The position numbers and the translations under genes are program-made. From assembly GCA_965235115.1 (NCBI GenBank), contig OZ249443.1:8308001-8372000 (forward strand): a DNA stretch of 64,000 nt. Direction: 5' to 3'. Shown piece by piece: positions 21,001 to 54,470 of this stretch. How positions within the stretch are numbered: position 1 is the first letter of the stretch; each line of letters opens with the position of its first letter. The notes under the pieces are model-generated. The model was not told where the DNA came from. It made no database searches and worked only from the letters and a program-made list of their open reading frames with translations. The DNA is from Laetmonice hystrix. Its lineage: Eukaryota.

Positions 21001-24000
21001 CCTGTCACAGTGCCCGGTTCTCACGGTCCTTCCGTCTCTATGTATACGTGTAGGCAGGTGATTCCCATCCCCCGGTACCGGCTAGGGGTCCTCCTGTCAC
21101 AGTGCCCGGTTCTCACGGTCCTTCCGTCTCTATGTATACGTGTAGGCAGGTGATTCCCATCCCCCGGTACCGGCTAGGGTCCTCCTGTCACAGTGCCCGG
21201 TTCTCACGGTCCTCTCGTCTCTATGTATAGGCCTAGGTGTAGGCAGGTGATCCCCATCCCCCGGTACCGGCTAGGGGTCCTCTTGTGACACTGACAGTGC
21301 CCGGTTCTCACGGTCCTCTCGTCTCTATGTATAGGCCTAGGTGTAGGCAGGTGATCCCCATCCCCCGGTACCAGCTAGGGGTCCTCTTGTGACAGCGCCC
21401 GGTTCTCACGGTCCTCCCGTCTCTATGTATGCGTGTAGGCAGGTGGTCCCCATCCCCCGGTACCGGCTAGGGGTCCTCCTGTGACAGTGCCCGGTTCTCA
21501 CGGTCCTCTCGTCTCTATGTATATGTGTAGGCAGGTGATCCCCATCCCCCGGTACCGGCTAGGGGTCCTCCTGTGACACTGACAGCGCCCAGTTCTCACG
21601 GTCCTCTCGTCTCTATGTATACGTGTAGGCAGGTGATTCCCATCCCCCGGTACCGGCTAGGGGTCCTCCTGTGACAGTGCCCGGTTCTCACGGTCCTCTC
21701 GTCTCTATGTATACGTGTAGGCAGGTGATTCCCATCCCCCGGTACCGGCTAGGGGTCCTCCTGTGACAGTGCCCGGTTCTCACGGTCCTCTCGTCTCTAT
21801 GTATAAATTTTCAGAAAGAGAAGGAGCGAGGGTCACATCTTTACTACATGTTCCGGCTGCCGTTCGCTGCCGGTAATGTGTTCAGTGCCAGTATGCTGGA
21901 CACACTTCTATACCAGGTACGACTTCAGGTCGGGTACTTCTATACACGCTTTGTACGGGGACATGGAATCTTTAACAAATTCTGCTCTAAAAGTTCGAAG
22001 ACAATTCATGTGTCTTTAAAAATCCCTTTGGTCCTTGTAAGCTTTTGTCTTTTGTTAAAGTTAAGCTGAGGTCAACTTAATGCATGTTATCCTACCCCGA
22101 CGGACCGTTTGGATGGAGGAGATGCCGTTAAAAACTTGTATTTTATCATCAAGAAATCCTGTATAATATATATGTCTATAGTAGTGGATGTAAAACCAAC
22201 CTGTGAGTATTAATCTTAATTTGTTTTTTTAACCCAGGCCTTTGTAAAGGATTACCTCATTACATTTGTACGTCTCCTGCTCGGCATCGACCAAGCTGTG
22301 GGCTCAGGCCACCTCTCCTGTGTGAGTGCAACCATTATCATTTTGCCATTCTCACTATGTGCCAACTAATTTACTCAACTCTGTGGGTAAGGAGAAAACG
22401 AGAGTGTACAGCAGGATGCGGTATAATCTTTCCTGCTGATCAGAATTCTGGAACCCCCTGTAGATATCAACTTCACCCTGTACCTGGAACCCCCTGTAGA
22501 TATCAACTTCACCCTGTACCTGGAACCCCCTGTAGATATAAACTTCACCCTGTACCTGGAACCCCCTGTAGATATAAACTTCACCCTATACCTGGAACCC
22601 CCTGTAGATATCAACTTCACCCTGTACCTGGAACCCCCTGTAGATATCAACTTCACCCTGTACCTGGAACCCCCTGTAGATATCAACTTCACCCTGTACC
22701 TGGAACCCCCTGTAGATATCAACTTCACCCTGTACCTGGAACCCCCTGTAGATATCAACTTCACCCTGTACCTGGAACCCCCTGTAGATATCAACTTCAC
22801 CCTGTACCTGGAACCCCCTGTAGATATCAACTTCACCCTGTACCTGGAACCCCCTGTAGATATAAACTTCACCCTGTACCTGGAACCCCCTGTAGATATC
22901 AACTTCACCCTGTACCTGGAACCCCCTGTAGATATAAACTTCACCCTGTACCTGGAACCCCCTGTAGATATCAACTTCACCCTGTACCTGGAACCCCCTG
23001 TAGATATCAACTTCACCCTGTACCTGGAACCCCCTGTAGATATCAACTTCACCCTGTACCTGGAACCCCCTGTATAAACTTCACCCTGTACCTGGAACCC
23101 CCTGTATAAACTTCACCCTGTACCTGGAACCCCCTGTAGATATCAACTTTACCCTGTACCTGGAACCCCCTGTATCAACTTCACCCTGTACCTGGAACCC
23201 CCTGTAGATATCAACTTTACCCTGTACCTGGAACCCCCTGTAGATATCAACTTTACCCTGTACCTGGAACCCCCTGTATCAACTTCACCCTGTACCTGGA
23301 ACCCCCTGTATAAACTTCACCCTGTACCTGGAACCCCCTGTATCAACTTCACCCTGTACCTGGAACCCCCTGTATAAACTTCACCCTGTACCTGGAACCC
23401 CCTGTAGATATCAACTTCACCCTGTACCTGGAACCCCCTGTAGATATCAACTTCACCCTGTACCTGGAACCCCCTGTATAAACTTCACCCTGTACCTGGA
23501 ACCCCCTGTATCAACTTCACCCTGTACCTGGAACCCCCTGTATAAACTTCACCCTGTACCTGGAACCCCCTGTATAAACTTCACCCTGTACCTGGAACCC
23601 CCTGTATCAACTTCACCCTGTACCTGGAACCCCCTGTAGATATCAACTTCACCCTGTACCTGGAACCCCCTGTAGATATCAACTTCACCCTGTACCTGGA
23701 ACCCCCTGTAGATATCAACTTCACCCTGTACCTGGAACCCCCTGTAGATATCAACTTCACCCTGTACCTGGAACCCCCTGTAGATATCAACTTCACCCTG
23801 TACCTGGAACCCCCTGTAGATATCAACTTCACCCTGTACCTGGAACCCCCTGTATAAACTTCACCCTGTACCTGGAACCCCCTGTAGATATCAACTTCAC
23901 CCTGTACCTGGAACCCCCTGTAGATATCAACTTCACCCTGTACCTGGAACCCCCTGTAGATATCAACTTCACCCTGTACCTGGAACCCCCTGTAGATATC

Positions 24001-27000
24001 AACTTCACCCTGTACCTGGAACCCCCTGTATAAACTTCACCCTGTACCTGGAACCCCCTGTAGATATCAACTTCACCCTGTACCTGGAACCCCCTGTATA
24101 AACTTCACCCTGTACCTGGAACCCCCTGTAGATATCAACTTCACCCTGTACCTGGAACCCCCTGTATAAACTTCACCCTGTACCTATGTTTCAGATGAAG
24201 ATCAGCAAGGATGAGTTATGGATCCGGACGTACGGGCGCCTGTACCAGAAGCTATGCTCGACAACGTGTGAGATCCCTATCGGAATCTACCGGACCCAGA
24301 CCCAACTGTCGTCCGACTCCTCCTCGGTAAGTTATCCCCACCCCCACGGTCCCATCACAGAATAACATACTCTGTGGTCCCATCACCCGGCAGTCGTCAA
24401 GTTTTCATCGTCAAATCACATAATGGCGGGTGTGGGTGAAAAGGGTAGGCCAGGGACCGAGGGCCGCAGGGGATATCAAGAATTTCATCACCCAAGGACA
24501 TCCCACGTCTCGACTATAAGAGATGAACCCTTGCTCAGGAATCACCAGGTCATTTCTCAAGGGATCGTACCAAGTCGTTTCCCTGTCAGAACCTCCGGTT
24601 TTTAATTAGCATCGTCATCGACACCATCTATGGCATGAGTTTTATCCAGTAGCGAATCCAGGGGCTGGGTCGGGGTTTTCATCCCATTCGGGAGGTAAAA
24701 ATAATGGAACCCAAATGTAACCTTCATCAGTCCATCAAAATCCACATCGGTTCATTCATTATTAACATCATCACCGTTAGCCGGGAGAGAGATTTGTGAT
24801 GAGTTAAACCTGACTAAACACTTACCGTGTGTTTGTCAGAGTGAGCGGCGACCGTCGTTCTTTGCCTCTGTAAGTACACACACGTCTTCGTACCACACAC
24901 CAACTTGCCTGACTCAAACCTCTTCCCCCGGGAACGATCTCTGGTAGGGAGACCCAGTATCGGCATGATGTCAGTACCTTACAGTCATCACAGCCATGGC
25001 AGTCTACCTGCTAAAGACCTTCCAGTGTATTCTACTCCACAAACATTGCATTGCTTTTCCTTGGATCTAAATCACATTGGAGTTTCATTGCGAATGCCTT
25101 ACCCAGAAAGGGAACGCAAGTTTGGAATGCTGCCTGCAACACTTGGGAGAAGGGGAGGGCGTATTGCGATACCATTTTATTCCTAAGTGACCAATCCCAA
25201 TACCCCTTTCAAGTGAAGTCATGTGCACCTGCCAATGAAAATGATTCTCTCATAATCGGATGGCGTCGTTTTCTCGAAGCACCTCCGTGCATGGCTCGTG
25301 GTGATTATGTCATGTTTTTAAAGTTAAGATGTATCATTTGTTCTGGGGTGGGGGTCAATTAGTGTTGCTGTCGGTTTGTTCCATGATGAAAGACCATGGC
25401 GCTGACCATGATCCTGTTTCTCAAAACTAAAGTTCTTGCTTAAGCTTAAGATTGATCTGAGCACTTGTGATTGGCTGGTCTTCTGTGACTAGCCAATCAG
25501 AAGCTTTAGCTGGGCCGAGATGACGATAAACCTTGCCTCGTGTACCGCAAGCATGTGACACTCGGCTGAGACCTGCTACATGGACCAAACTGTTATCATA
25601 ATCTGTGTCACTGAATGCTATCTTCATATTGGCGACCACTCGTTAGGTCGCTCCAAACTCCGCAGCCTTTATTGTGTTTCTGTCAGGGGGGGGGGGATTA
25701 CATGTCAGTTTGTGACATGTCTTGCTCTTCTAGAACTCGTAACTTACTCATCAGTCTTTTCATTCGGCGACCATGAGCATGATATACTACATAACGTTAA
25801 TTACGGAGTCTATCATGACGTATGTATCGATATTTAGTGAGTTTAGCAATATTGAATAGTATTGGTTATTACTGAACTCAATGTGAGTTATTAATATTAG
25901 TACTTAGTGAACTCGGTATGACGTATCAGTGGTAACCAAACATGGCATCAGGTAACAACGTCCGTGCTCACTGACTTCAGCAGCAGAAGTTTACCTTTAA
26001 CAAATGTTCCTTTCCCGACACATCGCATTGCGCAAATCAAGTCCTGTCGATTATTGGGCTACATTGACTCCCTTAAAGGGCCACCAGCATTTAGGAAGCA
26101 TGTACTTTACCTTTGCTAATGTTGTTTCTAAACTATACATTTCTGTGAATATGGTATACTTTATTTTTACTCTCTTTTCTTTCCGTCATAATGAAGATAA
26201 TGGTTTGTGATTCACAACCCTGTAAGATAATTAGCATATACTGCCTATTTATTGGTTTCAGCTGTGGGATGCTAAAGAAAGTTATATAAACTTTCCACTT
26301 TAATTCGTTTTGAGAACAACTCAATGGTTCTGTCTTCGTATACCTCTATTTTACCCGCTCTTTTCTACTTTATCCCACTGTTAATGTTGTAAAGTCGACA
26401 ATCTTGCTTGAAAGCAAAGCGAAAGAAATGTGTAATGAGAGTTGGAATCGTATGCCGCCGTGGTAGACGGAGTAAAGTCGGCCGTGTTGTAGACAACTCT
26501 GTGTTTGACCACTTCAATGTGCTCCTTGTTTGGCCTTGATTTTTGACTCTGTTCGTGCATGTGTTTCGTCCCTCCTCGGAAGCTGTTGGGCTCAGAGCAG
26601 AGTCCCGACCATAAAGTCATTGGGCGCAAAAGCCTAAAGCGTAGACGGATGCATGGCAGCTTGTACGTGAGTATAAAACTACTGTCTCGCCTCGAGCCTT
26701 CGCCACAAAACACCACGCAACACATGCCTACAGTCAGCTCGCACAGAATATTGATGTAATGATACCATCCACGTCAGTGGGCACTTTCTGTGTCAGTCTT
26801 CAACACACAAAGTTAACAATCGAAATTTGTTACAAAATAACCGAGTTTGAAGCAGCGGCAATCGTCCATTAAACGTATTGAGGCTACTGTGGTTGTTGAA
26901 GCGTTCTGTGGTAGACTTCTTCTCGCAGCTGCATGTGTGCCGTTTTGCTCTTTGTTTGCCCTGTCTTTTCTTTTCTATCCTTTATGTTGCTTTCTCTTTA

Positions 27001-34312: not shown

Positions 34313-34899
34313 ATATGCTCCATCATATCGGCCATACAGTGCAGTTAAAGTCAAGTCTTAGAATGCAATAAGCCGAGAAAAATTTAAAATTATTAATTAC
34401 AGGGATTTAAATGTGACATGTACTATAATACTAGCCACAGGCATTCAAAAGTATATCACAATTAATATATACACGCTTAAAAAAGAAAATGCAAAAATAG
34501 TTAGTCCCAAACATTCTCATTGCTAATTATTAATGTATCGCCCTATACTTGACGAGATCATAAAACAAATTGTTGCCTATAACATGACCCAAACCCACCC
34601 TTGCTAACTATAAAAATAAGAACAACCATTTATAGAATGGTTCCTTGCGGTTCCTTGCCCATCATTATTAGCGTCTCCAGTTTGATCCTTCTTTCCGCTT
34701 GGAGAAAGGTTTCGTGTCCAGGGACCTATAAAAAGGTGACAAGGCAGTAAGTATTATAACCTCCCCATGCCTCATAATTCAAGCTTTCCTACTACCCCCC
34801 CCCCCCCCCCGCCCACCCTTTACCTTGTCGCTACGTTCCCAACGGGGGGAAATATGGCAAAGTAGGGTCAGTCCGTAAAGTGGGCCATGTGTCCACCGA

Positions 34900-35019
34900 G
34901 GCGGAGTATACCCACAGTCACATGGCGGAGTATACCCACAGTCACATGGCGGAGTATACCCACAGTCACATGGCGGAGTATACCCACAGTCACATGGTGG
35001 AGTATACCCACAGTCACAT
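34900..35019. repeat. 24-bp tandem repeat, 5 copies
   Basis: Unit GGCGGAGTATACCCACAGTCACAT. Confidence 0.95.
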
Positions 35020-35081
35020 AGACAGCGTGGTAATGTTTAGATCTAGCTGGTTAGCGAAAAGGTAGGCTGGATACATATCTA

Positions 35082-35683: not shown

Positions 35684-35831
35684 CTACGACTGGAGACTGA
35701 AGAGGCTGTTTGAGATATCCTCGACGAGTTCGGCCGACTCGGTGAAGTAGCGCATGAAGTCGTGTACTTTATATCGGAGTGCCATACCGCCCACCGGTAC
35801 ATCGAGTAGGCCGCCCCCCTCGTCCACGTGG
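35684..35831 (-). CDS. MyTH4-FERM gene last exon (HVDEGGG...[30 protein letters not shown])
   Basis: TTCCCTCAG acceptor, phase 2 matches the previous exon. Confidence 0.75.
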
Positions 35832-38024
35832 CTGAGGGAAGGCATTCAATTCAACACTATACGTACACCACAGTCAATTTGTACAATTGATATTTTTTGT
35901 TTATTTATGAGGATAGAAAAATAACATAATGTCTATCAGGTGATTTATTGATGAGGACGGTTGTGATATACGAGGACCACAATGGCCAGGTAAACTGAGG
36001 ACTATGATGTGCAGGTCTAATGACGAGGACCATAATGGTCTAATATACTGATGAGGACTATGGTGCAGATAAACCGGTGAGGACGGTAATGTTAAGATAA
36101 TACTGATAAGTAATTGGCAAGGTAAAGTCTTAAAGTTGACTTGCTTACCTTTCCGCGCCCCCGTCTGTGTCTTCATCGGAAGCCTGGTCTGTGTTAGTTT
36201 TGAAGTTTTGAAGTCTATTGAAGGTCAGTAGAAGGTCACATATGTCCTTGGCCTCGGCTGACGTGAACACATACTGTTCGTCGTTGGCCGTTGCTATGGT
36301 CACACATCTTCCATGTGTCTTTGTCGTCCTGGCAAAATCAATGGAAAATGTCGGGTACTCCGGTATTATCCATCAATATATGACACTGGCTGTCCTACCG
36401 CGTGGCAAGAAGAGGGAGCAGAAAATGCCAAATGCTGCACAACTATGATACTTTCTACCAAGTTCAAATAGGCCGTTTTACGCTTTAGAAGGAAAGGCGA
36501 GCCTGAAATGCCAACCTGATAGACATTTTGATCAAGGCGCCCCCTACCTCCCAAAACACCTGTTGTGCCGGGTAATGCCCGGTTAGACAAGACAGCAGCC
36601 TAGTCAGTTCTCCACCTCTCGCTGCTGACTTGGGTTTGACTTTTTAGCATCCTACTTTACTATGAAAGGAGTAGTGGCAGGCTGACACTAACTTATCCCA
36701 ATATTTTCTCGTTTTAACTTACCAATTCATCAAGCTAACGTACTTGCCAACAATATCACACGCTCATTTCGGTTGTTCTTCACATATTATAAGATCTACA
36801 CGCTTTTGCAACTCAGTACCTTTATAAGATCTACACGCTTTTGCAACTCAGTACCTCCTAAAACTGGCGGTATCCACCGGAAGTAGTGCTTAGCGACGGG
36901 TACCGTAAGCGACCGGTAGACCGGAAGCTGTTCACCTCGCTAGGCGCTAACCTGGCCATGCCCTTGGCTGATTCCCTCCTTCCTGGTTGCAGAGAAGGCA
37001 GCATCTCCAGCCAAGCCATGTCGTTGGACTAAGCGCTTAGAGCCAACCTCTGTCGCTTGGCCCATCGGAAAGATTCATGGTCTTCCGGCGATATCTGCCA
37101 GGCCATATAGATCTACGACCGTCCTGGCGCCCGGCCCTGCCAGGCGCTATACGATTGTCCTGGCGCCCGGCTCTGGCTTCGCTGAACAGTTAGTCCTACA
37201 TCCAGAATTGCGGCTACCGCCAGTTTTAAAGCCGCAAAAGCCTGAAGATCTTATCATGAAAGAACAACCGAGATCAGCATGTGACGTGGGAAGTGGGTTA
37301 GCTTGATTAATTGGAGAGTTAAAACGGGGAAATAAGCCTAGAGTAGAGGGATAAGTTGCCAAAAAGAGTAATGCCACTACTCCTTTAATAGTAAAGTAGG
37401 ATGTTAAAAGGTCAAACCCTGGGCCCGGTTTTTACTTCGTCATTTTACCAATCTTAAGACTGGAATTTGATGATTGACTTGTGTTATGGTATCTCATTGG
37501 CTGACTTCATTTGAAGAACCAATCAGAAGTTCGGAAACGAGTTCAGTCTTCAGATTTTTAAGATTCGGTTTGCAAACAAAAAACCGGGGGTTAGTCAGCA
37601 ACGAAGCGGAGAACGGTTAGAAGCGGTAATGCCCACCTGCTACAGGAGACACTGCTGATGTCGGAGAAAGCCAGCTCCAGCATGACGCTGTCGGCGGCGT
37701 CCACCACGTAAAACCCACCGGCGTTGACGGCCAGACAGACCCTGGCCATGGCAGGGATCGGTCCAGCGAACGGGTACGCCTCAAAGAACCGGGAAAACTG
37801 GCGGGGCCACTTGTGGACGGCCAGCTCAACGACGTCCTCCTTCACCTAGTGGAGAGAGAGGCGGTGGGGCTAACTGTGGGCGAGTCCGGAGATCCATCTA
37901 TTGTTGGGTTTATTGGAGATAGAGAAGGTGGCGTACGAACGTGTGGAAGACAGCAAGATATAAGGACAAGAAAGAAAGAGAGGGTGTGGCACTATAAGAG
38001 AGTGATGGAGGAAAACCGCGCTGT

Positions 38025-38110
<86 letters not shown>

Positions 38111-41100
38111 CTCTATCTGTGTCTGTGTGTTTATATGAATGTCATTGGATGGAGTGGTTGCCCCCTATTAAAGGTTACATAAGAAACGTTTGGAGATACT
38201 CAGGCCCGTATATTGCCCGACAGAAGTAGGACCTCTTCTCCCCCTTACCCTGAGTGGCGAGGCACAGTTAAGGAAGGAGTGTTCGTGGATGACCATTGGC
38301 ACCCACTGTTCCAAGTGACTGTTGTTGTGAAGGAGGTGGTCCGGTATGTAGGAGGGAAGTAGAGACTTGAGGCGCTCCTCTTTCATGTCGAGATCGTGCT
38401 CTATGTAATACTGCTGGGCGGCCAGCCGCGCCATCTCGTCGGCCTGTCAACACCACATCTATAACTCGTATTCTGGGCACCAGGCCAGGACAACGTTTAG
38501 TTAGCAACGGCTCTAATTTGATCTCTTTTTAACTCCAAGAAGTCATGCTGGGCCATCGAAAAATGACACGGTGATATCATAATAAGGAGGGAGATAGATT
38601 ATGTATAGCCGTGCTGCATGGGTAAAAAGTTAGGAATCGGTATGGAAACTTGTTGCTTCATAGGCAGCCAGGCCAACACAAAGTCGGCTAAGTTTGATGA
38701 CAGTATAAAAACACTTGATATGGTATTGGCGGGCATCCAATAAAGCCTGGTTTAAGCACATAAGTGCAAGATGATGATCTCCTTAAAAAAAGAATTGAAT
38801 AGACCTCAACAGAAACATTATACGTCTCTCACATACAGTCTCCTCAACTCACATTGTCTATGCGATACTCGCCGAACTTAATCCCTCGCACCACCTGGTG
38901 GTAAATGAGGTTTGTCGCCACAGCGTCACTTCCGGAGTCATGCCATGGGGAGAAGTACTCCTTCCGGAAGAAAAGCCGCCAGGGGGCGTTCCGCTCCTCA
39001 AAGCCACGTTCTCGCGCGATCTGCTCGTACTGTGATATGGCGTCCATGACGTGTTTCCCTCCGTTGCCTAAGGAGGTAACCTGGAACGTAGCCATGGCAA
39101 CCCATGCACGCATGCGCTTTCAATGGACACATAATCGGCTTGACAGGACACAACACAAATATTATAGGTCAAGTTTGTGTGATTCTTACACGTTATAAGA
39201 CGAGCTAGTTTTTGGGAGTATGGCCAAGCACAGTAGACTCACCTTATCAAATGCTGTTATAAGAAGAGAGAATCCAAACTGGTCCCGGAGTCCCAGTTTC
39301 TGTGAGAGTTCTTGAGAGAACTCACGCGCCGTGGTGGACGAGTCGGCCAGGAGTGTCTTTGTTTGACCATTCATCAGCGTGGTCAGCAGTGGCCACTGAC
39401 GCTTCGTCTTGCAACCCTAGAAACACACATTTACATTTAGAGAGGTAACGGGGCTAATTCCCGGTGGTTTGAGATTCTGGCTGAGGGCCAGCTAAGGAAG
39501 TGCCTTTCCTCCGGGCTCGAACACTGCCCTCATCGCCGGGTGTTTCCGACTGGGTTATCAGGAGGTCGGCCTGTAACACCGTGTCCAAGGACAACATCCA
39601 ATAAAGGGGGGGGGGCGGCTAAGGGAATGCCCTAGAAAAAGGGTCTGTAAGGGTCAGGTCAATAAATTATTTTAGCTAAAGAAGGAACCATAGAGTTAGA
39701 ATGTCTCGAGGAAGGGTTCATAAACTGATTAGTGATATGTATGATTCGTATTTGGAACGTGTACTTGAAATTGTGTTGAATATAGGGGGTGTTTACCATA
39801 TCCTCTCAGGTTAAGGCGAAAATCGCGATTAAAATGCCTGGCGTAAGAGGTCTAAAAGACTTACTTATATGCAACAAGCTAGCTGAACTAAAGCGAAAGC
39901 ATCTATTGACATCCATCCCATTTGTAAATAGGTGCAAAGTAACACTGTACCTGGAATTCGAGCCAGCCGGGGGGTTCGTTCCGGTTACCGTTAGTCAGGG
40001 TGCGCTGTAAACGTTCCTGACAGAACGGCGCGTATCGGGGCGGGCCAGCGACGATAAAATAGTGCAGGTAGGGGAGGAAATTCTTAGACGGAACGAAACA
40101 CCCGGTGCACAGTGACAGGAGGATCCATCCTCGGGCGTGACTGTTCCGGTCCGGGTTTTGTGTCAACTGCTTGCAGATCTGACAGTAAACTTCGTCTCTA
40201 TAAATAGAAACGTCATCTGTCATCACGTGACCTCGCCGAGATTTTTATGCGGTGACAAATGTAGGCATAAATGCCAAGACCCACATCTAGAATTGCTTTC
40301 TTGTTACAGTATCGAGGCCAAGTCAAAACGTATGGTCTGATATTTAAGAACCAAGTAAGAGCGAGGCCCTTACTGACAATATTAGTAGTAGTCTACTATT
40401 AGTGTAGTCTTCTATTATGTGTAGACTTCTAAAAAGTGGACCGAGGAGGGAGGCTGATTGGCATAAAATCAGTAGGGCTGAAAGTTGCAGTTTGAATTTC
40501 GTATAGATTCCGAGGACAGAATGCTGCCGCAGTAGTCGTGGTCCTACCTTAGATCGGGACGGACAATGGCGTTGCCGACGATATAGTGAACCTTCTCCAG
40601 AGAGGTGGTAGGCCGGTTCATCAATAGCTCGTCAACCTCTTTCTGTTCTCCAGACAACATTGCAAAGTTGAAATCTTCCGATTTCTTAGCTTTTCCCTTC
40701 AGCGCGCCGCGGATGAATTTTTTTTGCAATGAAAATCGGCTGGCCTTGGAGGCATTTAGACCGTGATGTTCCTTGTTCTTATTGTCTTTTGAATCCTGTC
40801 GAACTCCGTCAGGGCTCTGCTCAACCTTTGAGAGCTTGGAGTTTCGGCCAAGGCTGGCGTATATTTTACTCATCACTGGGGCTGTGTCCTGGAGATAAAT
40901 AATGAGTAGAGAGCAACAAATCTCACAAAAAGGCAAAACGTATAATATAATATAATGGGTTGTTTCTAGAAAGAGCCCCCCTTCTACCCTTTAGATCTGC
41001 TTAGATAGTAACTTTGAACTAGGGACTTCATTCCCTGCCACTTGATTGTCCGCGAATACTATAAAAGAAGTTACGTGATCAGTGACCAATATCTTCCCGG

Positions 41101-41752
41101 GATCGCTGTCGGTAGGCTGAAGTTGTTCCTGCATTGCTTACTGACTATGAACAAGGTGGCATTAAAACGTCCATTCATTGAACCATACATGAGAATAAGT
41201 GAGGGTTTACCTTAACATTCTTCTGATCTCCAGTTTTGTCTGCCATGTCTCCCATAAACCGGAGAATCGTGATCCACACTGCCAGGGCGGCCTGTGTGTG
41301 AGAGATAACAGGATTTAAACAATGTGTGCGTGGGGAGGGGGGGGACTATCAAACTGCGATAGATGTGTAAAATACAATCATGCCAACGTCTCCAACGGCG
41401 GCAAGGCTTTGAGTCATACAAAATAATTATACACACCATAAAGTGAAAAAGTAATTCTACAACTTCTTATTGCGTTGAAGTACCCAGAGAGATTTTAATA
41501 TCGGTTCTGAATAATGTCTTTGGTATAACTTGTAGCCAGACAACTAGTATAAAGTCTTGCCTGGCGGTCCTCTCTCCGTAGCGGCAGTAAGGGTGCCTCC
41601 AACATTGTCCGGGTAAAACGACAACTCACGCCCTCCCGGAAGTAGCTGGTAGCGAAGTTAGCAAACTTGTGCGGCTCCATGTTGTTGGTGGCGCCCTCTG
41701 TGTCCGAGAGGTCATGCTCTATGTCCAGGTTTGCCATGGACCCGCCCACGTC
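35684..41752 (-). CDS. Myosin-VII-like MyTH4-FERM protein gene (10 in-phase exons, 664 aa to stop), apparently without SH3 or second MyTH4-FERM
   Basis: Collinear with the myosin VIIA tail: [106 protein letters not shown]. Stop TAG at 35686-35684. Confidence 0.93.
36149..36328 (-). CDS. MyTH4-FERM gene exon (end of FERM F3: [28 protein letters not shown] plus acidic tail)
   Basis: Matches Myo7 [34 protein letters not shown] donor. Confidence 0.88.
36787..36856. repeat. Exact 35-bp tandem duplication
   Basis: TTATAAGATCTACACGCTTTTGCAACTCAGTACCT twice. Confidence 0.95.
36859..37228. mobile_element. Intronic MITE-like element, about 370 bp
   Basis: 14-bp perfect inverted termini TAAAACTGGCGGTA / TACCGCCAGTTTTA. 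Confidence 0.6.
37637..37845 (-). CDS. MyTH4-FERM gene exon (VKEDVVELA...ISSVSCSR)
   Basis: FERM F2/F3; phase 0 to 2. Confidence 0.93.
38028..38107. repeat. (CT)n microsatellite
   Basis: About 40 CT units with one interruption. Confidence 0.98.
38249..38443 (-). CDS. MyTH4-FERM gene exon ([13 protein letters not shown]...CASPLR)
   Basis: FERM F2; 65 codons; GTAAGG donor. Confidence 0.92.
38853..39080 (-). CDS. MyTH4-FERM gene exon ([17 protein letters not shown]...FGEYRIDN)
   Basis: High similarity to Myo7[18 protein letters not shown]; GTGAGT donor. Confidence 0.95.
39243..39416 (-). CDS. MyTH4-FERM gene exon (GCKTKRQW...[11 protein letters not shown]...[12 protein letters not shown])
   Basis: FERM F1; GTGAGT donor. 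Confidence 0.94.
39951..40197 (-). CDS. MyTH4-FERM gene exon (MyTH4 core: DEVYCQ...PPGWLEFQ)
   Basis: Canonical MyTH4 motifs. Confidence 0.96.
40548..40888 (-). CDS. MyTH4-FERM gene exon ([10 protein letters not shown]...[23 protein letters not shown])
   Basis: Matches Myo7A PVMTKIY and [23 protein letters not shown]. Confidence 0.93.
41211..41291 (-). CDS. MyTH4-FERM gene exon ([27 protein letters not shown])
   Basis: 15-residue identity with Myo7[16 protein letters not shown]. Confidence 0.94.
41561..41752 (-). CDS. MyTH4-FERM gene exon ([10 protein letters not shown]...[10 protein letters not shown]...REDRQ), GC donor
   Basis: CTAG acceptor; CAG|GCAAGA donor keeps phase 0 with the next exon. 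Confidence 0.88.
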
Positions 41753-42305
41753 CTAGATAGTGAATAATGCCGGGTTATAAAAACATCACTTATATACCTT
41801 TATCGGACCCGCCGCTGTAGGCCGGTAGAGATGGCTTTCCACATTATAAACACACGCAGGCCTACGCACAGGTGTTTCTAACATACATTGAACTTATTAA
41901 CTGTGCATTTTTTATGTTGTATATTGTTGCTGTTAGCGTCAGTATAGTATTTAGATATCTCATACTTATTTTTATGGGTCAGCTGATTTTATTTTAATGA
42001 AACCTTTATGCGAGACCGCCTCTTAAAAGGTCCTTCCCTGTAGGATACAAACTAAATTTTATAGATGGAAGGAATTCTTTTTATCGCAATGAAAGATTCA
42101 ACATGCCCAACTACTATTATGTATACTTTAATTGTCAGTTCAAGGTAGGCCTATATGGGAAAAGGTTAGCTTTACGTGTCGCTGAATATTTTTTTCTGGG
42201 CTTATCATTGGTGTCAAAGGGGTAGTTGACATTTTACGAATGGTTTATACTATAATAAGCTGAGAGGTCAAAAACCTCTGGCGTAGATCTACGTGACTTT
42301 ATTAC

Positions 42306-42420
42306 CTCAGACGGGCCACCGTCCTCGTTCATGGTTTCCATTTCCGGTAGCGTTCGGTAGTTGAGCTTTCGTCCGGTAGATGCCGCTGAGGTCGTGTGCC
42401 GCTGATTTCCTGGTATAGAC
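42306..42420 (-). CDS. Probable upstream exon of the MyTH4-FERM gene (SIPGNQRHTT...EDGGPSE)
   Basis: TTGCAG acceptor, GAG|GTAATA donor, phase 2 to 0; no family similarity recognised. Confidence 0.55.
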
Positions 42421-43888
42421 CTGCAATTAACACCCATGTACTTGACTAAGTACATGAATACCAAGTGAAGAATACAAATGATAAGTTTTTCTTTATGAGT
42501 AGGTAAAGAAGAATCCTGGGTTGTAGCATGAAGTGAAATGTGTGGAGACAAGATAACTTCATTCTTATCGTTTCCAGACATCAGTTCAGGCCATGAACTA
42601 ACTTCTTGGTCGACGTCCCTGCCCTTCAGTAGGCCGAATGATGGTTACCACAGGGTAGTAGGATATCTCCTTTCATACTCGCTCGCAGACATCGGTTTTA
42701 TCAACGAGACTAGACTAGTCTCGTTGGTTTTATCGACGGACACTTAGAACGAACGTTTCTAGGTGGCGTGTTCACCTCATGCAACTCGTTCCATGCTAAA
42801 AACCTGTTCCTGTGCCATCCATTCCAAGACTATATTCAGCTTCTGTTACTTTCAACAAACGCGTATCATATTTTAACCCGTTTAGTAGGCAAAAGCAAGC
42901 TTCACTGGACTTGTACACTGAAGGGCCCTGTTCTGAAAAAAAAGTTGCGTCACTGTCGGAGGTAAGTGGGGCGAGAGACACGATGGTAGGACGGAGGGAG
43001 GCAGGGGTCATGTGACTCGTCACTCCACCGGATGTCAGACCGTGGCAGCGCGCGCAGCCAAGCGGGACGCGCGACTGTCGTCTGGTATTTTCATCGATTC
43101 GGGCATTAATGTCGTTAATCAGAGCTGAAAGTTGGTTAAAAACGGTGCTCCGTCCGTGACTGTAATATTTTGTCTTACTTTCTGTGAGTTGGAGAGAACT
43201 GAGTTTATGAACTAGGAGATCCTATTAGTGATATCTATGCTGGGATGTTGACGTATATGCGAATATAGTATAGGGAATATAGATGGATTAAAGACACATT
43301 TGATACGATTAGTTTCTAGGAAGATGTCTCACTCTGCAGGCCAATGTAGTACTTTTAAAAGACTTAAAACAAAATTGATGAGCACCTGTCAATGAAGAGC
43401 CTGGGGCCTAATACATATATGTTGTCACCAAACTTGTCAAAGACGACGGTAAGTGTAGGTAAAGTCACCATGCGACCTCTAGAGTTCGCTAATTTAGTAT
43501 AGGGGATTCGGTCATGCATCCCTCTTGGGATTGTCTCCGGTAACGTGCTGTAGGTGAACGCTGCTCTTCATGATCGGCTCTATCTGTAAGACATGAGCCC
43601 TGGCCCTTTAAGGACTTTCAAAACATGCCCCTGGTAGGTCTATTATATAAAGCCATCTACATGTATATGATACACAATATTTGATCATCTCAGCCTCAGG
43701 ATGTCAATGTTGACAGGCTAACGGCCTCCTGTTCGACCTCAAGGGGTTGTCTGGGGCTGGGGTATTATTGTATACTCCCACTTGTCACCGTTAGCAGTGA
43801 CTGCAGGGACACACTCAGACGTCTTAGAGGACAACGTGTTTACCTCAGGTATACAGATCTGGCGAGGCTGAACGGATCTCTGGGAGAC

Positions 43889-44478
43889 CGTCAGCTGGCT
43901 GGCACGTCATGGACACAGAGCTCACGTCATGTTGGGAGGAGACTGTCAGCTGGTTGGCACATCATGGACACAGAGCTCACGTCATGTTGAGAGGAGACCG
44001 TCAGCTAGCACGTCATGGACACAGAGCTTACGTCATGTTGAGAGGGGACTGTGTGCTGGCTGGCACGTCATGGACACAGAGCTCACGTCATGTTGAGAGG
44101 AGACCGTCAGCTGGCACGTCATGGACACAGAGCTTACGTCATGTTGAGGGGAGACTGTGTGCTGGCTGGCACGTCATGGACACAGAGCTTACGTCATGTT
44201 GAGAGGAGACCGTCAGCTGGCTGGCACGTCATGGAAACAGAGCTCACGTCATGTTGAGAGGAGACCGTCAGCTGGCACGTCATGGACACAGAGCTTACGT
44301 CATGTTGAGAGGAGACTGTCAGCTGGCACGTCATGGACACAGAGCTCACGTCATGTTGAGAGGGGACTGTGTGCTGGCTGGCACGTCATGGACACAGAGC
44401 TCACGTCATGTTGAGAGGAGACTGTGTGCTGGCTGGCACGTCATGGACACAGAGCTCACGTCTTGTTGAGAGGAGACT
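43889..44478. repeat. About 50-57-bp minisatellite, about 11 copies
   Basis: Unit GCTGGCACGTCATGGACACAGAGCTCACGTCATGTTGAGAGGAGAC(C/T)GT. Confidence 0.95.
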
Positions 44479-45064
44479 GACAGAAAGTGCGTGGTGTCGG
44501 GGGGGGGGGGGGGGTGTAGTCCATGTATCTATAGGTACGCTATGTGCATATCTAGATGCCTTATAGATGCGGGTATATAGGTGTAATTACAATACATGCA
44601 TCATATCTGATATATATGCAATACCTCATACATTATTGATTTATAAAGTGTTATAAAGCCTGTGAATGTATGCCTATATGTATTAGTACAGATATTGGCG
44701 TAGGTGTGTGTGTATACGTCTGTGTAAGTAGGGTATGCATGTAGGCCTACACGTGCGTAGTTATAGGTATGTGTAGGCCTATAGGTAGGTATGCATGCAG
44801 GTTTATGTTTATGTGCAGTGCGTGCGTGGAAGGGGGGTGTGCGAGGGTGCGTGCGTGCGTGAGACACCAGCCACCCAAGCGGGTACACATTAAACCAACC
44901 TCCAGCGGCAGACGTCGGATGCCAACGTTTAGATCCCACAGCTGATCCAAACCTACCGACCCCTGGACCACCTCGCCGGGTGAGACGAACCGGCCTGACC
45001 GGCTTAGCCGGCCCAGCTGGTTGATGGCTGCCTGGCTGGCTGCCTGGCTGGTTCGATTACTTAC

Positions 45065-45216
45065 TCCGGCGACACTAACCCGGTCATCACATCATATCAT
45101 TCGGATTAATCCACGATATCAATTTGATTGTCATCACACTGTGCTGATTTAGAAACACACTCCATGCAGTCCGGCGTGTTTTGGTGGCGATGTGTTTGAC
45201 TTGTTGAGAGGTTCAC
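45065..45216 (-). CDS. Candidate start-codon exon of the MyTH4-FERM gene (ATG 45087, MTGLVSP-E)
   Basis: GTAAGT donor at 45064; the phase-2 end matches 42420; in-frame TGA 4 codons upstream of the ATG. Confidence 0.35.
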
Positions 45217-52249: not shown

Positions 52250-54470
52250 GTTGGTGACCTTCTATTTTGCCCAGTCTTCATAACCTCATGACCTGGCATT
52301 TAAATGTGTATGGTTTAAGCCGCCATTCCTTTACCACCGGAACAGGTGTTGGCCGAACCAATGGCCGTAGTTTCATGTTAATCCCCTGAAGATGTAATTT
52401 AGTGTAGGTCCAATATGTCCCGGATGAGCTTTAGTCGAGCATATGTACGTCAAACCAGCTCATCCCTTGACATGTGGCTTCGACAGGCCAGGGCAAAGTA
52501 CTATAGAGTATCAGAGGCTCTAGATGTCCATAGAAAACTCAGCGACGCGATTCACCCCGTCTTGTCGCTCTGTCGAGTTTGGCCAGTTACAGTCGCGTCA
52601 CAATATATAAAATCTGTTTAATATGATTAATCTTGACTGTGGTAAGTTGTTCCCGGTAATTTGAGACGGCTGAACACAATTCAATGACTTCCATTCTCCG
52701 CACAACTGTTATACCATACTTTAAAGGTCACACAACTTACCCAGTCTGTACTTTCTTACAAGAAAAAATCAGAATTACAAAATTATGTCAGACCCTACAA
52801 GCAATTTAAAGTATCTAGTTCTTTGTATAACACTCCGCTTTAAAAAAAAACGAATACGGGATCATGACTTTGAAAGAATGTTACTCAGTTTGTTCTTTCC
52901 CTTGTTCTATACCATTCCGCCAGTTTATATTTTTCATTACTAAGAGAGCACCAACCATTTTAAAGAGATCTGTTAAAGGCGCCTGTCCTTGATTTCTTAT
53001 TTAGTACATGCAGTATTATAGCAGTGATCGGGATATTATAGATCTGTGGTTGGTCCACCGCCTGTAATGTTTGTACAAGGAACTACGAGAAGGGCAACTA
53101 CTGTTTACCGGCCTAAAGCCACTGGCTTCAAGATTTACACACCTGCATATTTAGTGGCGCTGGTTGTAACTAAGAGACCTAGCCATCGGCACGGGTGGTA
53201 CCAAGAATCTACCTCGGGGGTGGGGATAGAGGGTTGGGTAGAGCTAGGGGTACAATCTGATATAGCAACGCCATGTTGTCGCTACCGACAAATATGAACG
53301 CCAAAGGCGCATTAATGTGGTTAACAGCGCCACTCTCCGGCTGAGGACTACACTAACACAATGTCTGAGGGACCGGCCATTTCATCCCTATAACTCAGAT
53401 GTGTGTACAATATAAATAATTGGTTTACCTAGCCAAGCCCTTCTCCCGGCGCCATCGCTCGCTAAGAATGCTATCAGAAATATGGTTCAACGATGTTGGC
53501 ATATAAATACGTGGAGTGGCCCCAAAGTGTCATGCCTCATCATGAAACATGCAGGCATGGACCGCAGGCAGGCGTGCTCCTGCTGCTTGCGTGTCCTCAG
53601 CTGATTTTATTAGGAGGTCCTTAGAATGTGTACGCCCACATAATGCACAGAAAGTATTATTCTAGAGCAGAAAGGCTTTCTCCCGAGGTGGTCCTGCAGC
53701 TCCCCACCCACCAAGGAAAACATACACTTTATGAAACAACTGGCTGGCAGCACAAAACCTTTTATGTGTCACATTTAACTTGGAAGTCACACAATATTTT
53801 TACATCCTATGCCTCAGTGGCGTTGGCAGGATTTCCGGGATTCATTTCCTTTTTTCGGCATGCCGGGAAATGTTGATGGTAACCAAGACAATAACAGTGG
53901 CTTGGTNNNNNNNNNNNNNNNNNNNNNNNNNNNNNNNNNNNNNNNNNNNNNNNNNNNNNNNNNNNNNNNNNNNNNNNNNNNNNNNNNNNNNNNNNNNNNN
54001 NNNNNNNNNNNNNNNNNNNNNNNNNNNNNNNNNNNNNNNNNNNNNNNNNNNNNNNNNNTTGTAAATAAACAATGAGTAATTTGTTAAAACCTCAGCGCAT
54101 GCCTTGATGCCCTTGCCGTGAGACTGAGGGGCCGAGAAGAGACAGTAGTTAGATACACATCAATCACAACCAGAGAGATTACCTAATTTAAATCGTTACC
54201 AATCTATCACTACATGACGCTGGTGTACACCCATTCCCCTATACCCCACTACCGCTCTGTGATTATCGTCAGGAGGATTATCCTCGATCCTGAGACACCC
54301 CCCAGTCACGTTCTGGAAGGATAAAACTGTGAGCCGGGTAGAGATAAGAGGGATTGAGAAGGGGTACAGAAGGTACAGCTGTATGGTCACATCGGCATGG
54401 TCGTGTTCATTATCTTCTCGATACGTAAGCCCCACTCAGTAACGTATTTTATAGTTTACGATTGCAGGAA
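52250..54470 (-). pseudogene. Putative endogenous negative-strand RNA virus L-protein fragment (capping/connector/methyltransferase region), decayed
   Basis: HPCRWLGLLVTTSATKY (53197-53147) resembles the first-Lys motif of mononegaviral L methyltransferases. DFIYCDA (52614-52594) resembles the catalytic-Asp motif. Several stops and frameshifts. Recognised from memory, not by search. Confidence 0.55.
53907..54058. other. Assembly gap (152 N)
   Basis: Run of N. Confidence 1.

What the first reader, a model, noticed from the sequence alone, without database searches (positions are those of the whole stretch)
35684..45216. Apparently motorless, single-module myosin-VII MyTH4-FERM protein
Seen: an intact 10-exon frame encodes the first MyTH4-FERM of a myosin VII tail, then an acidic stretch and a stop where myosin VII has SH3 and a second MyTH4-FERM. 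Upstream exons (42420-42306, candidate ATG exon 45216-45065 with an in-frame stop before it) resemble neither IQ, coiled coil nor motor. No myosin motor motif (GESGAGKT, LEAFGNA, DIFGFE) appears in the ORF track up to 64 kb. The predicted product is about 710 aa. The last exon ([11 protein letters not shown]) echoes the pre-MyTH4 helix (YKFAKFAATYF), suggesting a vestigial second module. Established: Myo7 MyTH4-FERM binds CEN motifs of SANS/USH1G and ANKS4B in microvillar and stereocilia link complexes; headless Myo10 exists as an isoform. Inference: a duplicated stand-alone adaptor or dominant-negative regulator of myosin VII complexes.
Basis: partly seen in the sequence, partly recalled or inferred. 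Interest (0 to 1): 0.8.

Follow-up and report, generated by a model that had tools for sequence, protein, structure and literature searches.

The report
Motorless myosin-VII tail-module gene copy
This is an intact gene that copies only the first cargo-binding module (MyTH4-FERM) of myosin VII. It has no motor, natural selection is still conserving it, and it is one of at least three such motorless copies in this probably molluscan genome.

Summary
On the minus strand, ten exons (window 41752-35684) give one open frame of 664 codons. Nine of them match, exon for exon and with the same intron positions and phases, the first MyTH4-FERM (MF1) of the full-length myosin VII gene on contig C10.

- **No motor or other myosin VII parts.** No motor, IQ, SH3 or second MyTH4-FERM homology lies within 122 kb upstream or 85 kb downstream. 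No motor exon lies anywhere on contig C8.
- **Under selection.** The copy is far diverged (54% protein identity to C10, synonymous sites saturated) yet has no stop codon. It keeps 78% of the positions invariant in myosin VII. Variants in the reads give pN/pS of about 0.11 (8 synonymous, 3 non-synonymous), and all 7 indels lie in introns.
- **Not supported.** The "vestigial second module" echo in the last exon is at chance level. That exon and both upstream exons are unverified. Read-through of exon 11 to a TAA followed by AATAAA is an equally good 3' end.
- **Missing evidence.** No RNA run was found for this organism, so expression and the 5' end remain open.
- **New here.** Two further motorless MF1-like loci lie on C10. 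One forms a 100/100 clade with an annelid MF1-only protein, and the C8 gene is not in that clade.

Function as a stand-alone adaptor is inferred. The three tested CEN2-pocket residues are conserved.

The parts
41561..41752 (-). Exon E3: region before MyTH4, including the pre-MyTH4 helix. The first in-frame ATG is at 41737-41735, and a TAG lies directly upstream inside the acceptor. The donor is GC (CAG|GCAAGA). An alternative strong GT donor at 41630 would drop 23 residues in frame.
   Evidence: the acceptor is homologous to the C10 exon acceptor
41211..41291 (-). Exon E4: start of the MyTH4 region ([15 protein letters not shown] motif).
40548..40888 (-). Exon E5: variable MyTH4 insert loop plus the helix before the MyTH4 core. 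It is 37% identical to C10.
   Evidence: no Pfam hit on its own
39951..40197 (-). Exon E6: MyTH4 core. It holds the ARGW motif, equivalent to the myosin VIIb A1128/R1129 CEN2-pocket residues.
   Evidence: PF00784 at 103 bits; 3PVL_A E=2.8e-35
39243..39416 (-). Exon E7: basic linker (the K equivalent to myosin VIIb K1192) and the first half of FERM lobe F1.
   Evidence: PF21989 at 48.7 bits
38853..39080 (-). Exon E8: second half of F1 and start of F2. It is the best conserved FERM exon, 67-77% identical to C10 depending on the tool.
38249..38443 (-). Exon E9: FERM lobe F2. It is diverged, 45% identical to C10.
   Evidence: no Pfam hit on its own
37637..37845 (-). Exon E10: first half of FERM lobe F3.
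   Evidence: PF21998 at 50 bits
36149..36328 (-). Exon E11: end of F3 plus an acidic tail ([13 protein letters not shown]). If the donor at 36148 is not used, the frame ends at TAA 36147-36145.
   Evidence: PF21998 at 24 bits
35900..35949 (-). Two AATAAA signals (starting at 35949 and 35905), about 200-245 nt after the read-through TAA. They are a candidate polyadenylation site for a transcript that ends with an extended exon 11.
35684..35831 (-). Candidate exon E12 (48 codons plus stop). It has a good acceptor and an open frame. It is similar to nothing in myosin VII, and no AATAAA follows for 1.5 kb. Unverified.
42306..42420 (-). It has a CAG acceptor, a GTAATA donor and a consistent frame, but no family match. 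Unverified.
45065..45216 (-). It has a GTAAGT donor, and after in-frame stops an ATG near 45087. Unverified.

Best explanation
**What it is.** A real, selectively maintained protein-coding gene. It arose when nine consecutive exons of the myosin VII gene, the block that encodes the pre-MyTH4 helix and the first MyTH4-FERM (MF1), were copied with their introns to another chromosome.

**The product.** It is about 617-710 aa, depending on ends that are not yet defined. It is MF1 alone, with no motor, IQ lever, SAH, SH3 or second MyTH4-FERM, so it cannot move on actin.

**How it probably works (inferred).** It most likely acts as a free-standing binding module. It keeps the MF1 fold and the basic MyTH4 pocket that binds the acidic CEN2 segment of SANS/ANKS4B-type adaptors in myosin VIIa/b. 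It could therefore scaffold such partners away from the motor or compete with myosin VII for them.

**Shown:** gene anatomy, origin by partial duplication, absence of a motor nearby, past and present purifying selection.

**Inferred:** transcription, the protein ends, partner binding, and the regulatory or adaptor role.
For: **Anatomy**
- 664-codon open frame across 10 exons with consensus splice sites.
- Domains MyTH4, F1 and F3 found by Pfam, and best PDB matches 3PVL and 5F3Y.

**Origin**
- Exons match the C10 myosin VII MF1 exons one to one.
- Coordinate transfer lands on an AG acceptor at all 9 exon starts and on a GT donor at 7 of 9 exon ends, in the same phases.

**No motor**
- The PF00063 scan of the genome gives no hit on C8.
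- A motor-exon query in which all 32 candidates were scored gives none on C8.
- tblastn with the C10 motor, IQ, SH3 and MF2 frames finds nothing significant (smallest E about 0.005) across the 214 kb searched.
- The motor motifs are absent, while the positive control finds them in C10.
- The ten largest upstream minus-strand frames have no Pfam domain.

**Selection**
- Third codon positions are 38% identical to C10, which is saturated. dN is about 0.35-0.38 and pairwise dN/dS is at most 0.13.
- An open frame of this length survives less than about 4% neutral divergence.
- The copy keeps 78% of the positions invariant in myosin VII, against 19% of consensus residues at variable positions.
- Among read variants, 8 are synonymous and 3 non-synonymous (pN/pS 0.11, binomial P = 0.0006). 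All 7 indel sites are intronic.

**Real single-copy locus**
- Read contigs cover exons and introns at an even 35-57x. One 3.2-kb contig spans E4-E9.

**Partner pocket**
- The equivalents of myosin VIIb A1128, R1129 and K1192 are conserved. The spacing was verified on 5F3Y_A.
Against: - No RNA run was found for this organism, so nothing shows that the gene is transcribed or where the transcript starts and ends.
- No ortholog was found in any protein collection. Constraint therefore rests on one paralog comparison and on within-sample variants.
- The reads may come from the same sample as the assembly.
- The SH3 domain, which packs against MF1 in myosin VIIa/b, is missing.
- 29 positions invariant in myosin VII are changed.
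- The branch is about ten times longer than that of the canonical gene, so partner specificity may have changed.
- Small upstream exons that encode some other domain cannot be excluded.
Confidence: 0.7

Rival explanations
1. The MyTH4-FERM block is the C-terminal part of a larger gene. Its upstream exons encode another domain that is not a myosin motor, and they were missed because they are short or diverged.
For: - E3 begins at a good acceptor that is homologous to an internal exon of myosin VII, so at least one upstream exon is likely.
- Two frame-consistent candidate exons with good splice sites exist.
- There are no RNA data.
Against: - The ten largest upstream minus-strand frames in the window have no Pfam domain, and neither does candidate exon 42306-42419.
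- The upstream 120 kb holds mostly repeats, a reverse-transcriptase-like frame and a single-exon GPCR.
- An in-frame ATG lies 5 codons into E3, just after a stop.
Confidence: 0.15
2. It is a silent or recently silenced partial duplicate, a young pseudogene or unexpressed relic, whose frame happens to be still open.
For: - Partial duplicates usually lack a promoter.
- No RNA evidence exists.
- No ortholog was found.
- The branch is long.
Against: - Synonymous sites are saturated against the parent, yet there is no stop in 664 codons. Neutral drift of more than 4% would usually break the frame.
- Substitutions avoid conserved positions.
- Present-day variants are mostly synonymous and all indels are intronic.
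- All 18 internal splice sites are intact.
Confidence: 0.1
3. It is part of a normal myosin VII-type gene whose motor exons lie beyond the searched region, or it was separated from them by an assembly error.
For: - A 152-base gap of N lies at 53907-54058.
- The genome-wide Pfam scan scored only 65 of 194 candidates.
Against: - A single-exon motor query in which all 32 candidates were scored finds no motor exon on C8.
- Nothing is found in 122 kb upstream.
- SH3 and MF2 are also missing downstream, where another gene on the opposite strand begins.
- A complete canonical myosin VII exists on C10.
- Read depth is even.
Confidence: 0.03

Closest known systems
Myosin VIIa / VIIb first MyTH4-FERM (MF1; solved as 3PVL with SANS and 5F3Y with ANKS4B), and this genome's own myosin VII on C10
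   Same: - Same domain order: pre-MyTH4 helix, MyTH4, then F1-F2-F3.
- Same intron positions and phases as the C10 gene.
- 54% identity to C10 MF1.
- CEN2-pocket residues conserved.
   Different: - No motor, IQ, SAH, SH3 or MF2.
- A separate gene on another contig.
- A branch about ten times longer than canonical.
- An acidic tail in place of SH3.
Headless myosin X (brain isoform)
   Same: A motorless protein that carries a myosin MyTH4-FERM and is thought to act without movement or against the full-length motor (PMC6345916).
   Different: - Headless Myo10 is an alternative-promoter isoform of the same gene and keeps the PH domains and coiled coil.
- The gene here is a separate, diverged gene with MF1 only.
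Annelid MF1-only protein KAK2143741.1 (Paralvinella palmiformis, P0101) together with this genome's locus B (C10:30.229-30.232 Mb)
   Same: - A motorless myosin VII-MF1-like protein of about 630 aa that ends just after the FERM.
- Found in a lophotrochozoan. Locus B and P0101 form a 100/100 clade.
   Different: - The C8 gene is not in that clade (AU p = 0.0002).
- It keeps the MyTH4 core in one exon, whereas loci B and C split it in two.
- It is only 30% identical to P0101.
Choanoflagellate MyTH4-FERM(-SH3) proteins of 614-630 aa (for example Salpingoeca rosetta PTSG_00887)
   Same: Complete open reading frames that encode an MF module without a motor.
   Different: - Only about a third identical to the C8 protein (P0072 33%).
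- They carry an SH3-like C-terminus.
- They served as the outgroup.
PLEKHH1-3 / MAX-1 (from general knowledge, not tested here)
   Same: Non-motor proteins with a MyTH4-FERM.
   Different: They have PH domains and are not derived from the myosin VII tail. The C8 exons are far closer to myosin VII MF1.

Membership tests
Class VII myosin | Myosin motor domain (PF00063) N-terminal to the tail | tested here: not met
   No PF00063 or motor-exon hit on contig C8, and none within 122 kb upstream.
Class VII myosin | IQ motifs / SAH lever between motor and tail | tested here: not met
   The C10 IQ/SAH frames find nothing significant upstream of E3.
Class VII myosin | Tail of MF1 - SH3 - MF2 | tested here: not met
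   Only MF1 is present. There is a single MyTH4 hit on C8, and no SH3 or MF2 homology in 85 kb downstream.
MyTH4-FERM domain proteins | MyTH4 domain | tested here: met
   PF00784 at 103 bits on exon E6 and 104.7 bits in the genome scan.
MyTH4-FERM domain proteins | FERM lobes F1, F2 and F3 directly after MyTH4 | tested here: met
   F1: PF21989 on E7 and E8. F3: PF21998 on E10 and E11. F2 (E8-E9) has no Pfam hit of its own but aligns colinearly with C10 and 3PVL.
CEN-binding MF1 of myosin VIIa/b | Basic MyTH4 pocket residues needed for CEN2 binding (myosin VIIb A1128, R1129, K1192) | tested here: met
   The A-R of ARGW and the K of the basic linker are conserved. The 64-residue spacing was confirmed on 5F3Y_A.
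CEN-binding MF1 of myosin VIIa/b | Actual binding of a SANS/ANKS4B-type CEN peptide, and presence of such a partner in this organism | not testable with these tools
   The spliced protein cannot be handed to the folding or complex tools by reference. No partner sequence was available.
CEN-binding MF1 of myosin VIIa/b | MF1-SH3 supramodule | tested here: not met
   No SH3 exon. The tail is similar to nothing in C10.
Lophotrochozoan MF1-only clade (P0101 / locus B) | Placement in that clade | tested here: not met
   A C8 plus locus B clade is rejected, AU p = 0.0002.
Processed (retro-) copy | Loss of introns | tested here: not met
   All eight parental introns are retained at the same positions and phases.

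The most novel reading that the evidence does not exclude
Lophotrochozoans carry a small, so far undescribed family of motorless proteins derived from the first MyTH4-FERM of myosin VII. It has at least two independent lineages. One (locus B plus the annelid protein) is shared between an annelid and this genome. The other is the C8 gene. These proteins would act as free adaptors or competitors that tune myosin VII-SANS/harmonin-type link complexes in ciliated or microvillar sensory cells.
Probability: 0.3. Interest if true: 0.65.

Novelty: new variant of a known kind. Interest (0 to 1): 0.5.

Why it matters
- **Blind spot in myosin catalogues.** The two myosin classification surveys checked here built their trees from motor (head) domains. 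A tail-only paralog would therefore not show up in such surveys.
- **A natural experiment.** A separate, selected gene that encodes only the myosin VII cargo module shows what MF1 can do without a motor. It offers a built-in competitor or scaffold for myosin VII adaptor complexes.
- **Recurrent or old.** This genome holds three such loci, and one lineage has an annelid relative. That suggests recurrent or ancient retention rather than an accident.
- **Limit.** Without expression data it remains a well-supported gene prediction, not a demonstrated protein.

Tried and rejected
The last-exon peptide against all C10 frames scores 37, against a shuffle mean of 35 with SD 3.9. 30% of shuffles reach the observed score. 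Rejected.
- **Ortholog searches.**
  - The exon E6 search of 1.84 billion cluster representatives gave nothing above 71% identity, all canonical myosin VII.
  - The profile search for proteins of 330-1050 aa was swamped by canonical myosin VII fragments. Only 120 of 2119 hits were listed, and the best identity to the model was 58%.
  - The exon E6 frame search for fragments gave canonical exons only.
  - The exon E5 search gave no hit.
  - These blanks do not show that orthologs are absent.
- **Alignments.** Aligning all exon peptides to one long homolog, to make a query specific to C8, failed. MAFFT scattered the fragments. Alignment A3 was used instead.
- **RNA evidence.** Two run searches found only DNA-like runs from one sample. 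The laid contigs are genomic and show no splice joints.
- **Dating the duplication.** This is unresolved.
  - Without an outgroup the copy sits with the mollusc myosin VII sequences (support 93/87).
  - With choanoflagellate outgroups it falls outside all animal MF1, and the mollusc placement is marginally rejected (p-AU 0.036). Long-branch attraction is likely.
- **More genome sequence.** Only 3.2 kb of locus B was studied.
- **Structure and complex prediction.** Not run.
- **Earlier scan notes.** None bear on this locus.
Full report
**Location and observation.** The window is G000:C8:8308001-8372000 in a 627-Mb, 35-contig genome. On the minus strand, frames carrying myosin VII-tail peptides are visible from 41752 down to 35684. 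I placed the splice sites by hand and joined the exons. The exons are E3 41752-41561, E4 41291-41211, E5 40888-40548, E6 40197-39951, E7 39416-39243, E8 39080-38853, E9 38443-38249, E10 37845-37637, E11 36328-36149 and E12 35831-35684. Together they give 1995 nt, 664 codons, with no internal stop. Every acceptor is AG. Every donor is GT except a GC donor after E3 (CAG|GCAAGA). Pfam on single exons finds MyTH4 on E6 (103 bits), the F1 lobe (RA_2) on E7 and E8, and the myosin-type F3 lobe (FERM_C1_MyoVII) on E10 and E11. The nearest solved chains are myosin VIIa MF1-SH3 (3PVL_A) and myosin VIIb (5F3Y_A).

**The parent gene and how the copy was made.**
- A genome scan with the MyTH4 model finds a single MyTH4 on C8 and a pair 6.5 kb apart at C10:27.15 Mb.
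- The motor model finds motor exons directly upstream of that pair, and none on C8.
- I fetched 40 kb of C10 and 150 kb flanking the window. The C10 frames hit the C8 region only at E3-E11, one C10 exon per C8 exon.
- Transferring C8 exon boundaries onto C10 by simple coordinate arithmetic lands on an AG at all nine exon starts. It lands on a GT at seven of nine exon ends, in identical phases. The other two ends differ by small length changes.
- The copy is therefore a DNA-level duplicate of nine consecutive exons with their introns, not a retrocopy.
- The C10 exons are 90-96% identical to myosin VII of snails, bivalves and octopus. C10 is the canonical gene, and the genome is probably molluscan, or at least lophotrochozoan.

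**No motor, and nothing else from myosin VII.**
- No C10 frame from the motor, IQ/SAH, SH3 or second MyTH4-FERM region matches at E below 0.001 in 122 kb upstream of E3 or 85 kb downstream.
- At lax thresholds there is only noise: the smallest E among motor, IQ and SAH frames upstream is 0.045, and about 0.005 in the whole search.
- GESGAGKT, NSSRFGK and DIFGFE are found in C10 and not in the 214 kb of C8.
- A motor exon used as a query, with all 32 candidates scored, finds myosin genes on nine contigs but none on C8.
- The ten largest upstream minus-strand frames in the window hold no Pfam domain.
- Further upstream lie repeats, a reverse-transcriptase-like frame and, at about +128.6 kb, a single-exon rhodopsin-type receptor gene on the same strand.
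- Downstream, plus-strand frames at the window start weakly resemble a Slo-type potassium channel.

**Is it a live gene?** The copy is far from its parent.
- Protein identity to C10 is 54% over 577 aligned codons. Third codon positions are 38% identical, which is saturated. dN is 0.35-0.38 and pairwise dN/dS is at most 0.13.
- In trees its terminal branch is 0.8-1.1 substitutions per site, against about 0.1 for C10. Most of the protein change is therefore on the C8 side.
- Even so, 664 codons are open. In simulation such a frame stays open with P below 0.05 once neutral divergence passes about 4%. A random frame of this length is open with P about 1.5e-14.
- Substitutions are not random. The copy keeps 78% of positions invariant across 16 myosin VII MF1 sequences. 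It keeps 66% of those at least 80% conserved, 38% of the moderately conserved and 19% of the variable ones. Most changes at invariant sites are conservative.
- Present-day variation points the same way. Contigs from three DNA runs of one sample cover 36100-42099 at an even 35-57x, introns included.
- Of 35 single-base variants, 11 are exonic: 8 synonymous and 3 non-synonymous (S36T, H133R, K243T). With 418 synonymous and 1427 non-synonymous sites, pN/pS is 0.11 and the binomial P is 0.0006.
- All seven indel sites are intronic.
- Caveat: the runs may be the sample from which the genome was assembled, so this is variation within one sample, not a population survey.

**The ends of the gene.**
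- 3' end. E11's donor is strong (AG|GTAAGC) and E12 has a good acceptor. However, E12 matches nothing: no Pfam family and only a chance-level score against every C10 frame. No AATAAA or ATTAAA follows its stop for 1.5 kb.
- If the E11 donor is not used, the frame ends one codon later at TAA 36147-36145. AATAAA signals then follow at 35949 and 35905.
- Either way the protein stops just after the FERM, with an acidic tail where myosin VII has SH3. The "vestigial second module" idea is not supported.
- 5' end. E3's acceptor is homologous to an internal myosin VII acceptor, and an in-frame TAG lies in it. The first ATG is five codons in, at 41737.
They have no other support.
- The product is between about 617 and 710 aa.
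- No RNA run was found for this organism.

**Relatives.**
- Searches of the large protein collections found no closer relative than canonical myosin VII: at most 71% identity on the MyTH4 exon and at most 58% over longer stretches. The organism's own proteins are not in those collections, so this blank says little.
- Within the genome, C8 exon queries uncovered two more myosin VII-MF1-like exon clusters. Locus B is at C10:30228954-30232294 and locus C at C10:19709673-19714052. Both cover MyTH4 to F3, and both split the MyTH4 core into two exons.
- Neither locus has a motor exon within megabases. The only motor hits on C10 are at 27.16 and 23.23 Mb.
- Locus B forms a 100/100 clade with an annotated annelid protein of 627 aa that is also MF1-only (Paralvinella KAK2143741.1). 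That gene has no motor in the 10 kb upstream. It lies beside a second, inverted MyTH4 gene.
- A C8 plus locus B clade is rejected (AU p = 0.0002).
- Choanoflagellates also have complete 614-630-aa MyTH4-FERM-only reading frames.
- The age of the C8 duplication is unresolved.

**Likely function.** This part is inferred.
- The fold-defining positions are kept.
- Yu et al. 2017 report that the triple mutation A1128E-R1129E-K1192E in the myosin VIIb MyTH4 abolishes binding of the SANS and ANKS4B CEN regions (PMC5493754).
- On 5F3Y_A these residues are the A-R of ARGW and the first K of the basic linker, 64 residues apart. All three are conserved in the C8 protein.
- A free MF1 that still binds acidic CEN-type segments could scaffold such partners or compete with myosin VII for them.
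- Against a simple reading: the SH3 partner domain is gone, 29 invariant positions have changed, and the branch is long. Specificity may have shifted.

**Verdict.** This is a motorless, selectively maintained partial paralog of myosin VII, and one of at least three motorless MF1-like loci in this genome. Two literature searches for a motorless or headless myosin VII MyTH4-FERM returned only work on other myosins and a plant kinesin. I class it as a new variant of a known kind. Its interest is moderate until transcripts are shown.

Noticed in passing
G000:C10:30228954-30232294 (+); partly held as L027: Locus B is a second myosin VII-MF1-like exon cluster covering MyTH4 to F3. It has an extra intron in the MyTH4 core and no motor exon nearby. 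It forms a 100/100 clade with an annelid MF1-only protein.
   Followed up: partly
G000:C10:19709673-19714052 (-): Locus C is a third MF1-like exon cluster with the same split MyTH4 exon as locus B. One hit contains a TAG.
   Followed up: no
L021 (Paralvinella palmiformis JAODUP010000816.1): The annelid MF1-only gene (627 aa) lies head to head with a second gene that carries MyTH4 and RA_2. No motor is annotated in the 10 kb upstream. This hints at local duplication of motorless MF genes in annelids.
   Followed up: partly
window 37300-37700: A very high-copy repeat lies in the intron after E10, with read word depth of about 150,000 against about 50 elsewhere. A plus-strand frame at 37423-37539 is 85% identical to a frame in the canonical C10 gene at 27161791-27161952, so it is probably a transposon fragment.
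   Followed up: partly
window 54-557 and 5718-6233 (+): Plus-strand frames resemble a Slo/Slack-type potassium channel. The Slo-like RCK match is 20 bits, below the cut-off. It is probably the neighbouring gene, converging on the MF1 gene's 3' end.
   Followed up: partly
window 2630-3470, 22200-24040, 34870-35065, 43900-44570: Long minisatellite arrays are open in several frames on both strands. The last one lies between the two candidate upstream exons.
   Followed up: no
window 37995-38165: A (GA/CT)n microsatellite lies in the intron between E9 and E10. Read contigs break there.
   Followed up: no
window 53907-54058: An assembly gap of 152 N. It was left as it is.
   Followed up: no
L012:4586-5740 (-) = about 128.6-129.7 kb on the window scale: A single-exon rhodopsin-family receptor gene (7tm_1, 66.8 bits) on the same strand. 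It is the first recognisable gene upstream.
   Followed up: partly
about 138-157 kb on the window scale (L013-L014): A tandem array with a period of about 4.6 kb, seen as repeated identical weak hits and repeated frames.
   Followed up: no
window 41630: A strong alternative donor (GTGAGT) inside E3 would join in frame to E4 and remove 23 residues homologous to myosin VII. The homologous junction uses a GC donor instead.
   Followed up: partly
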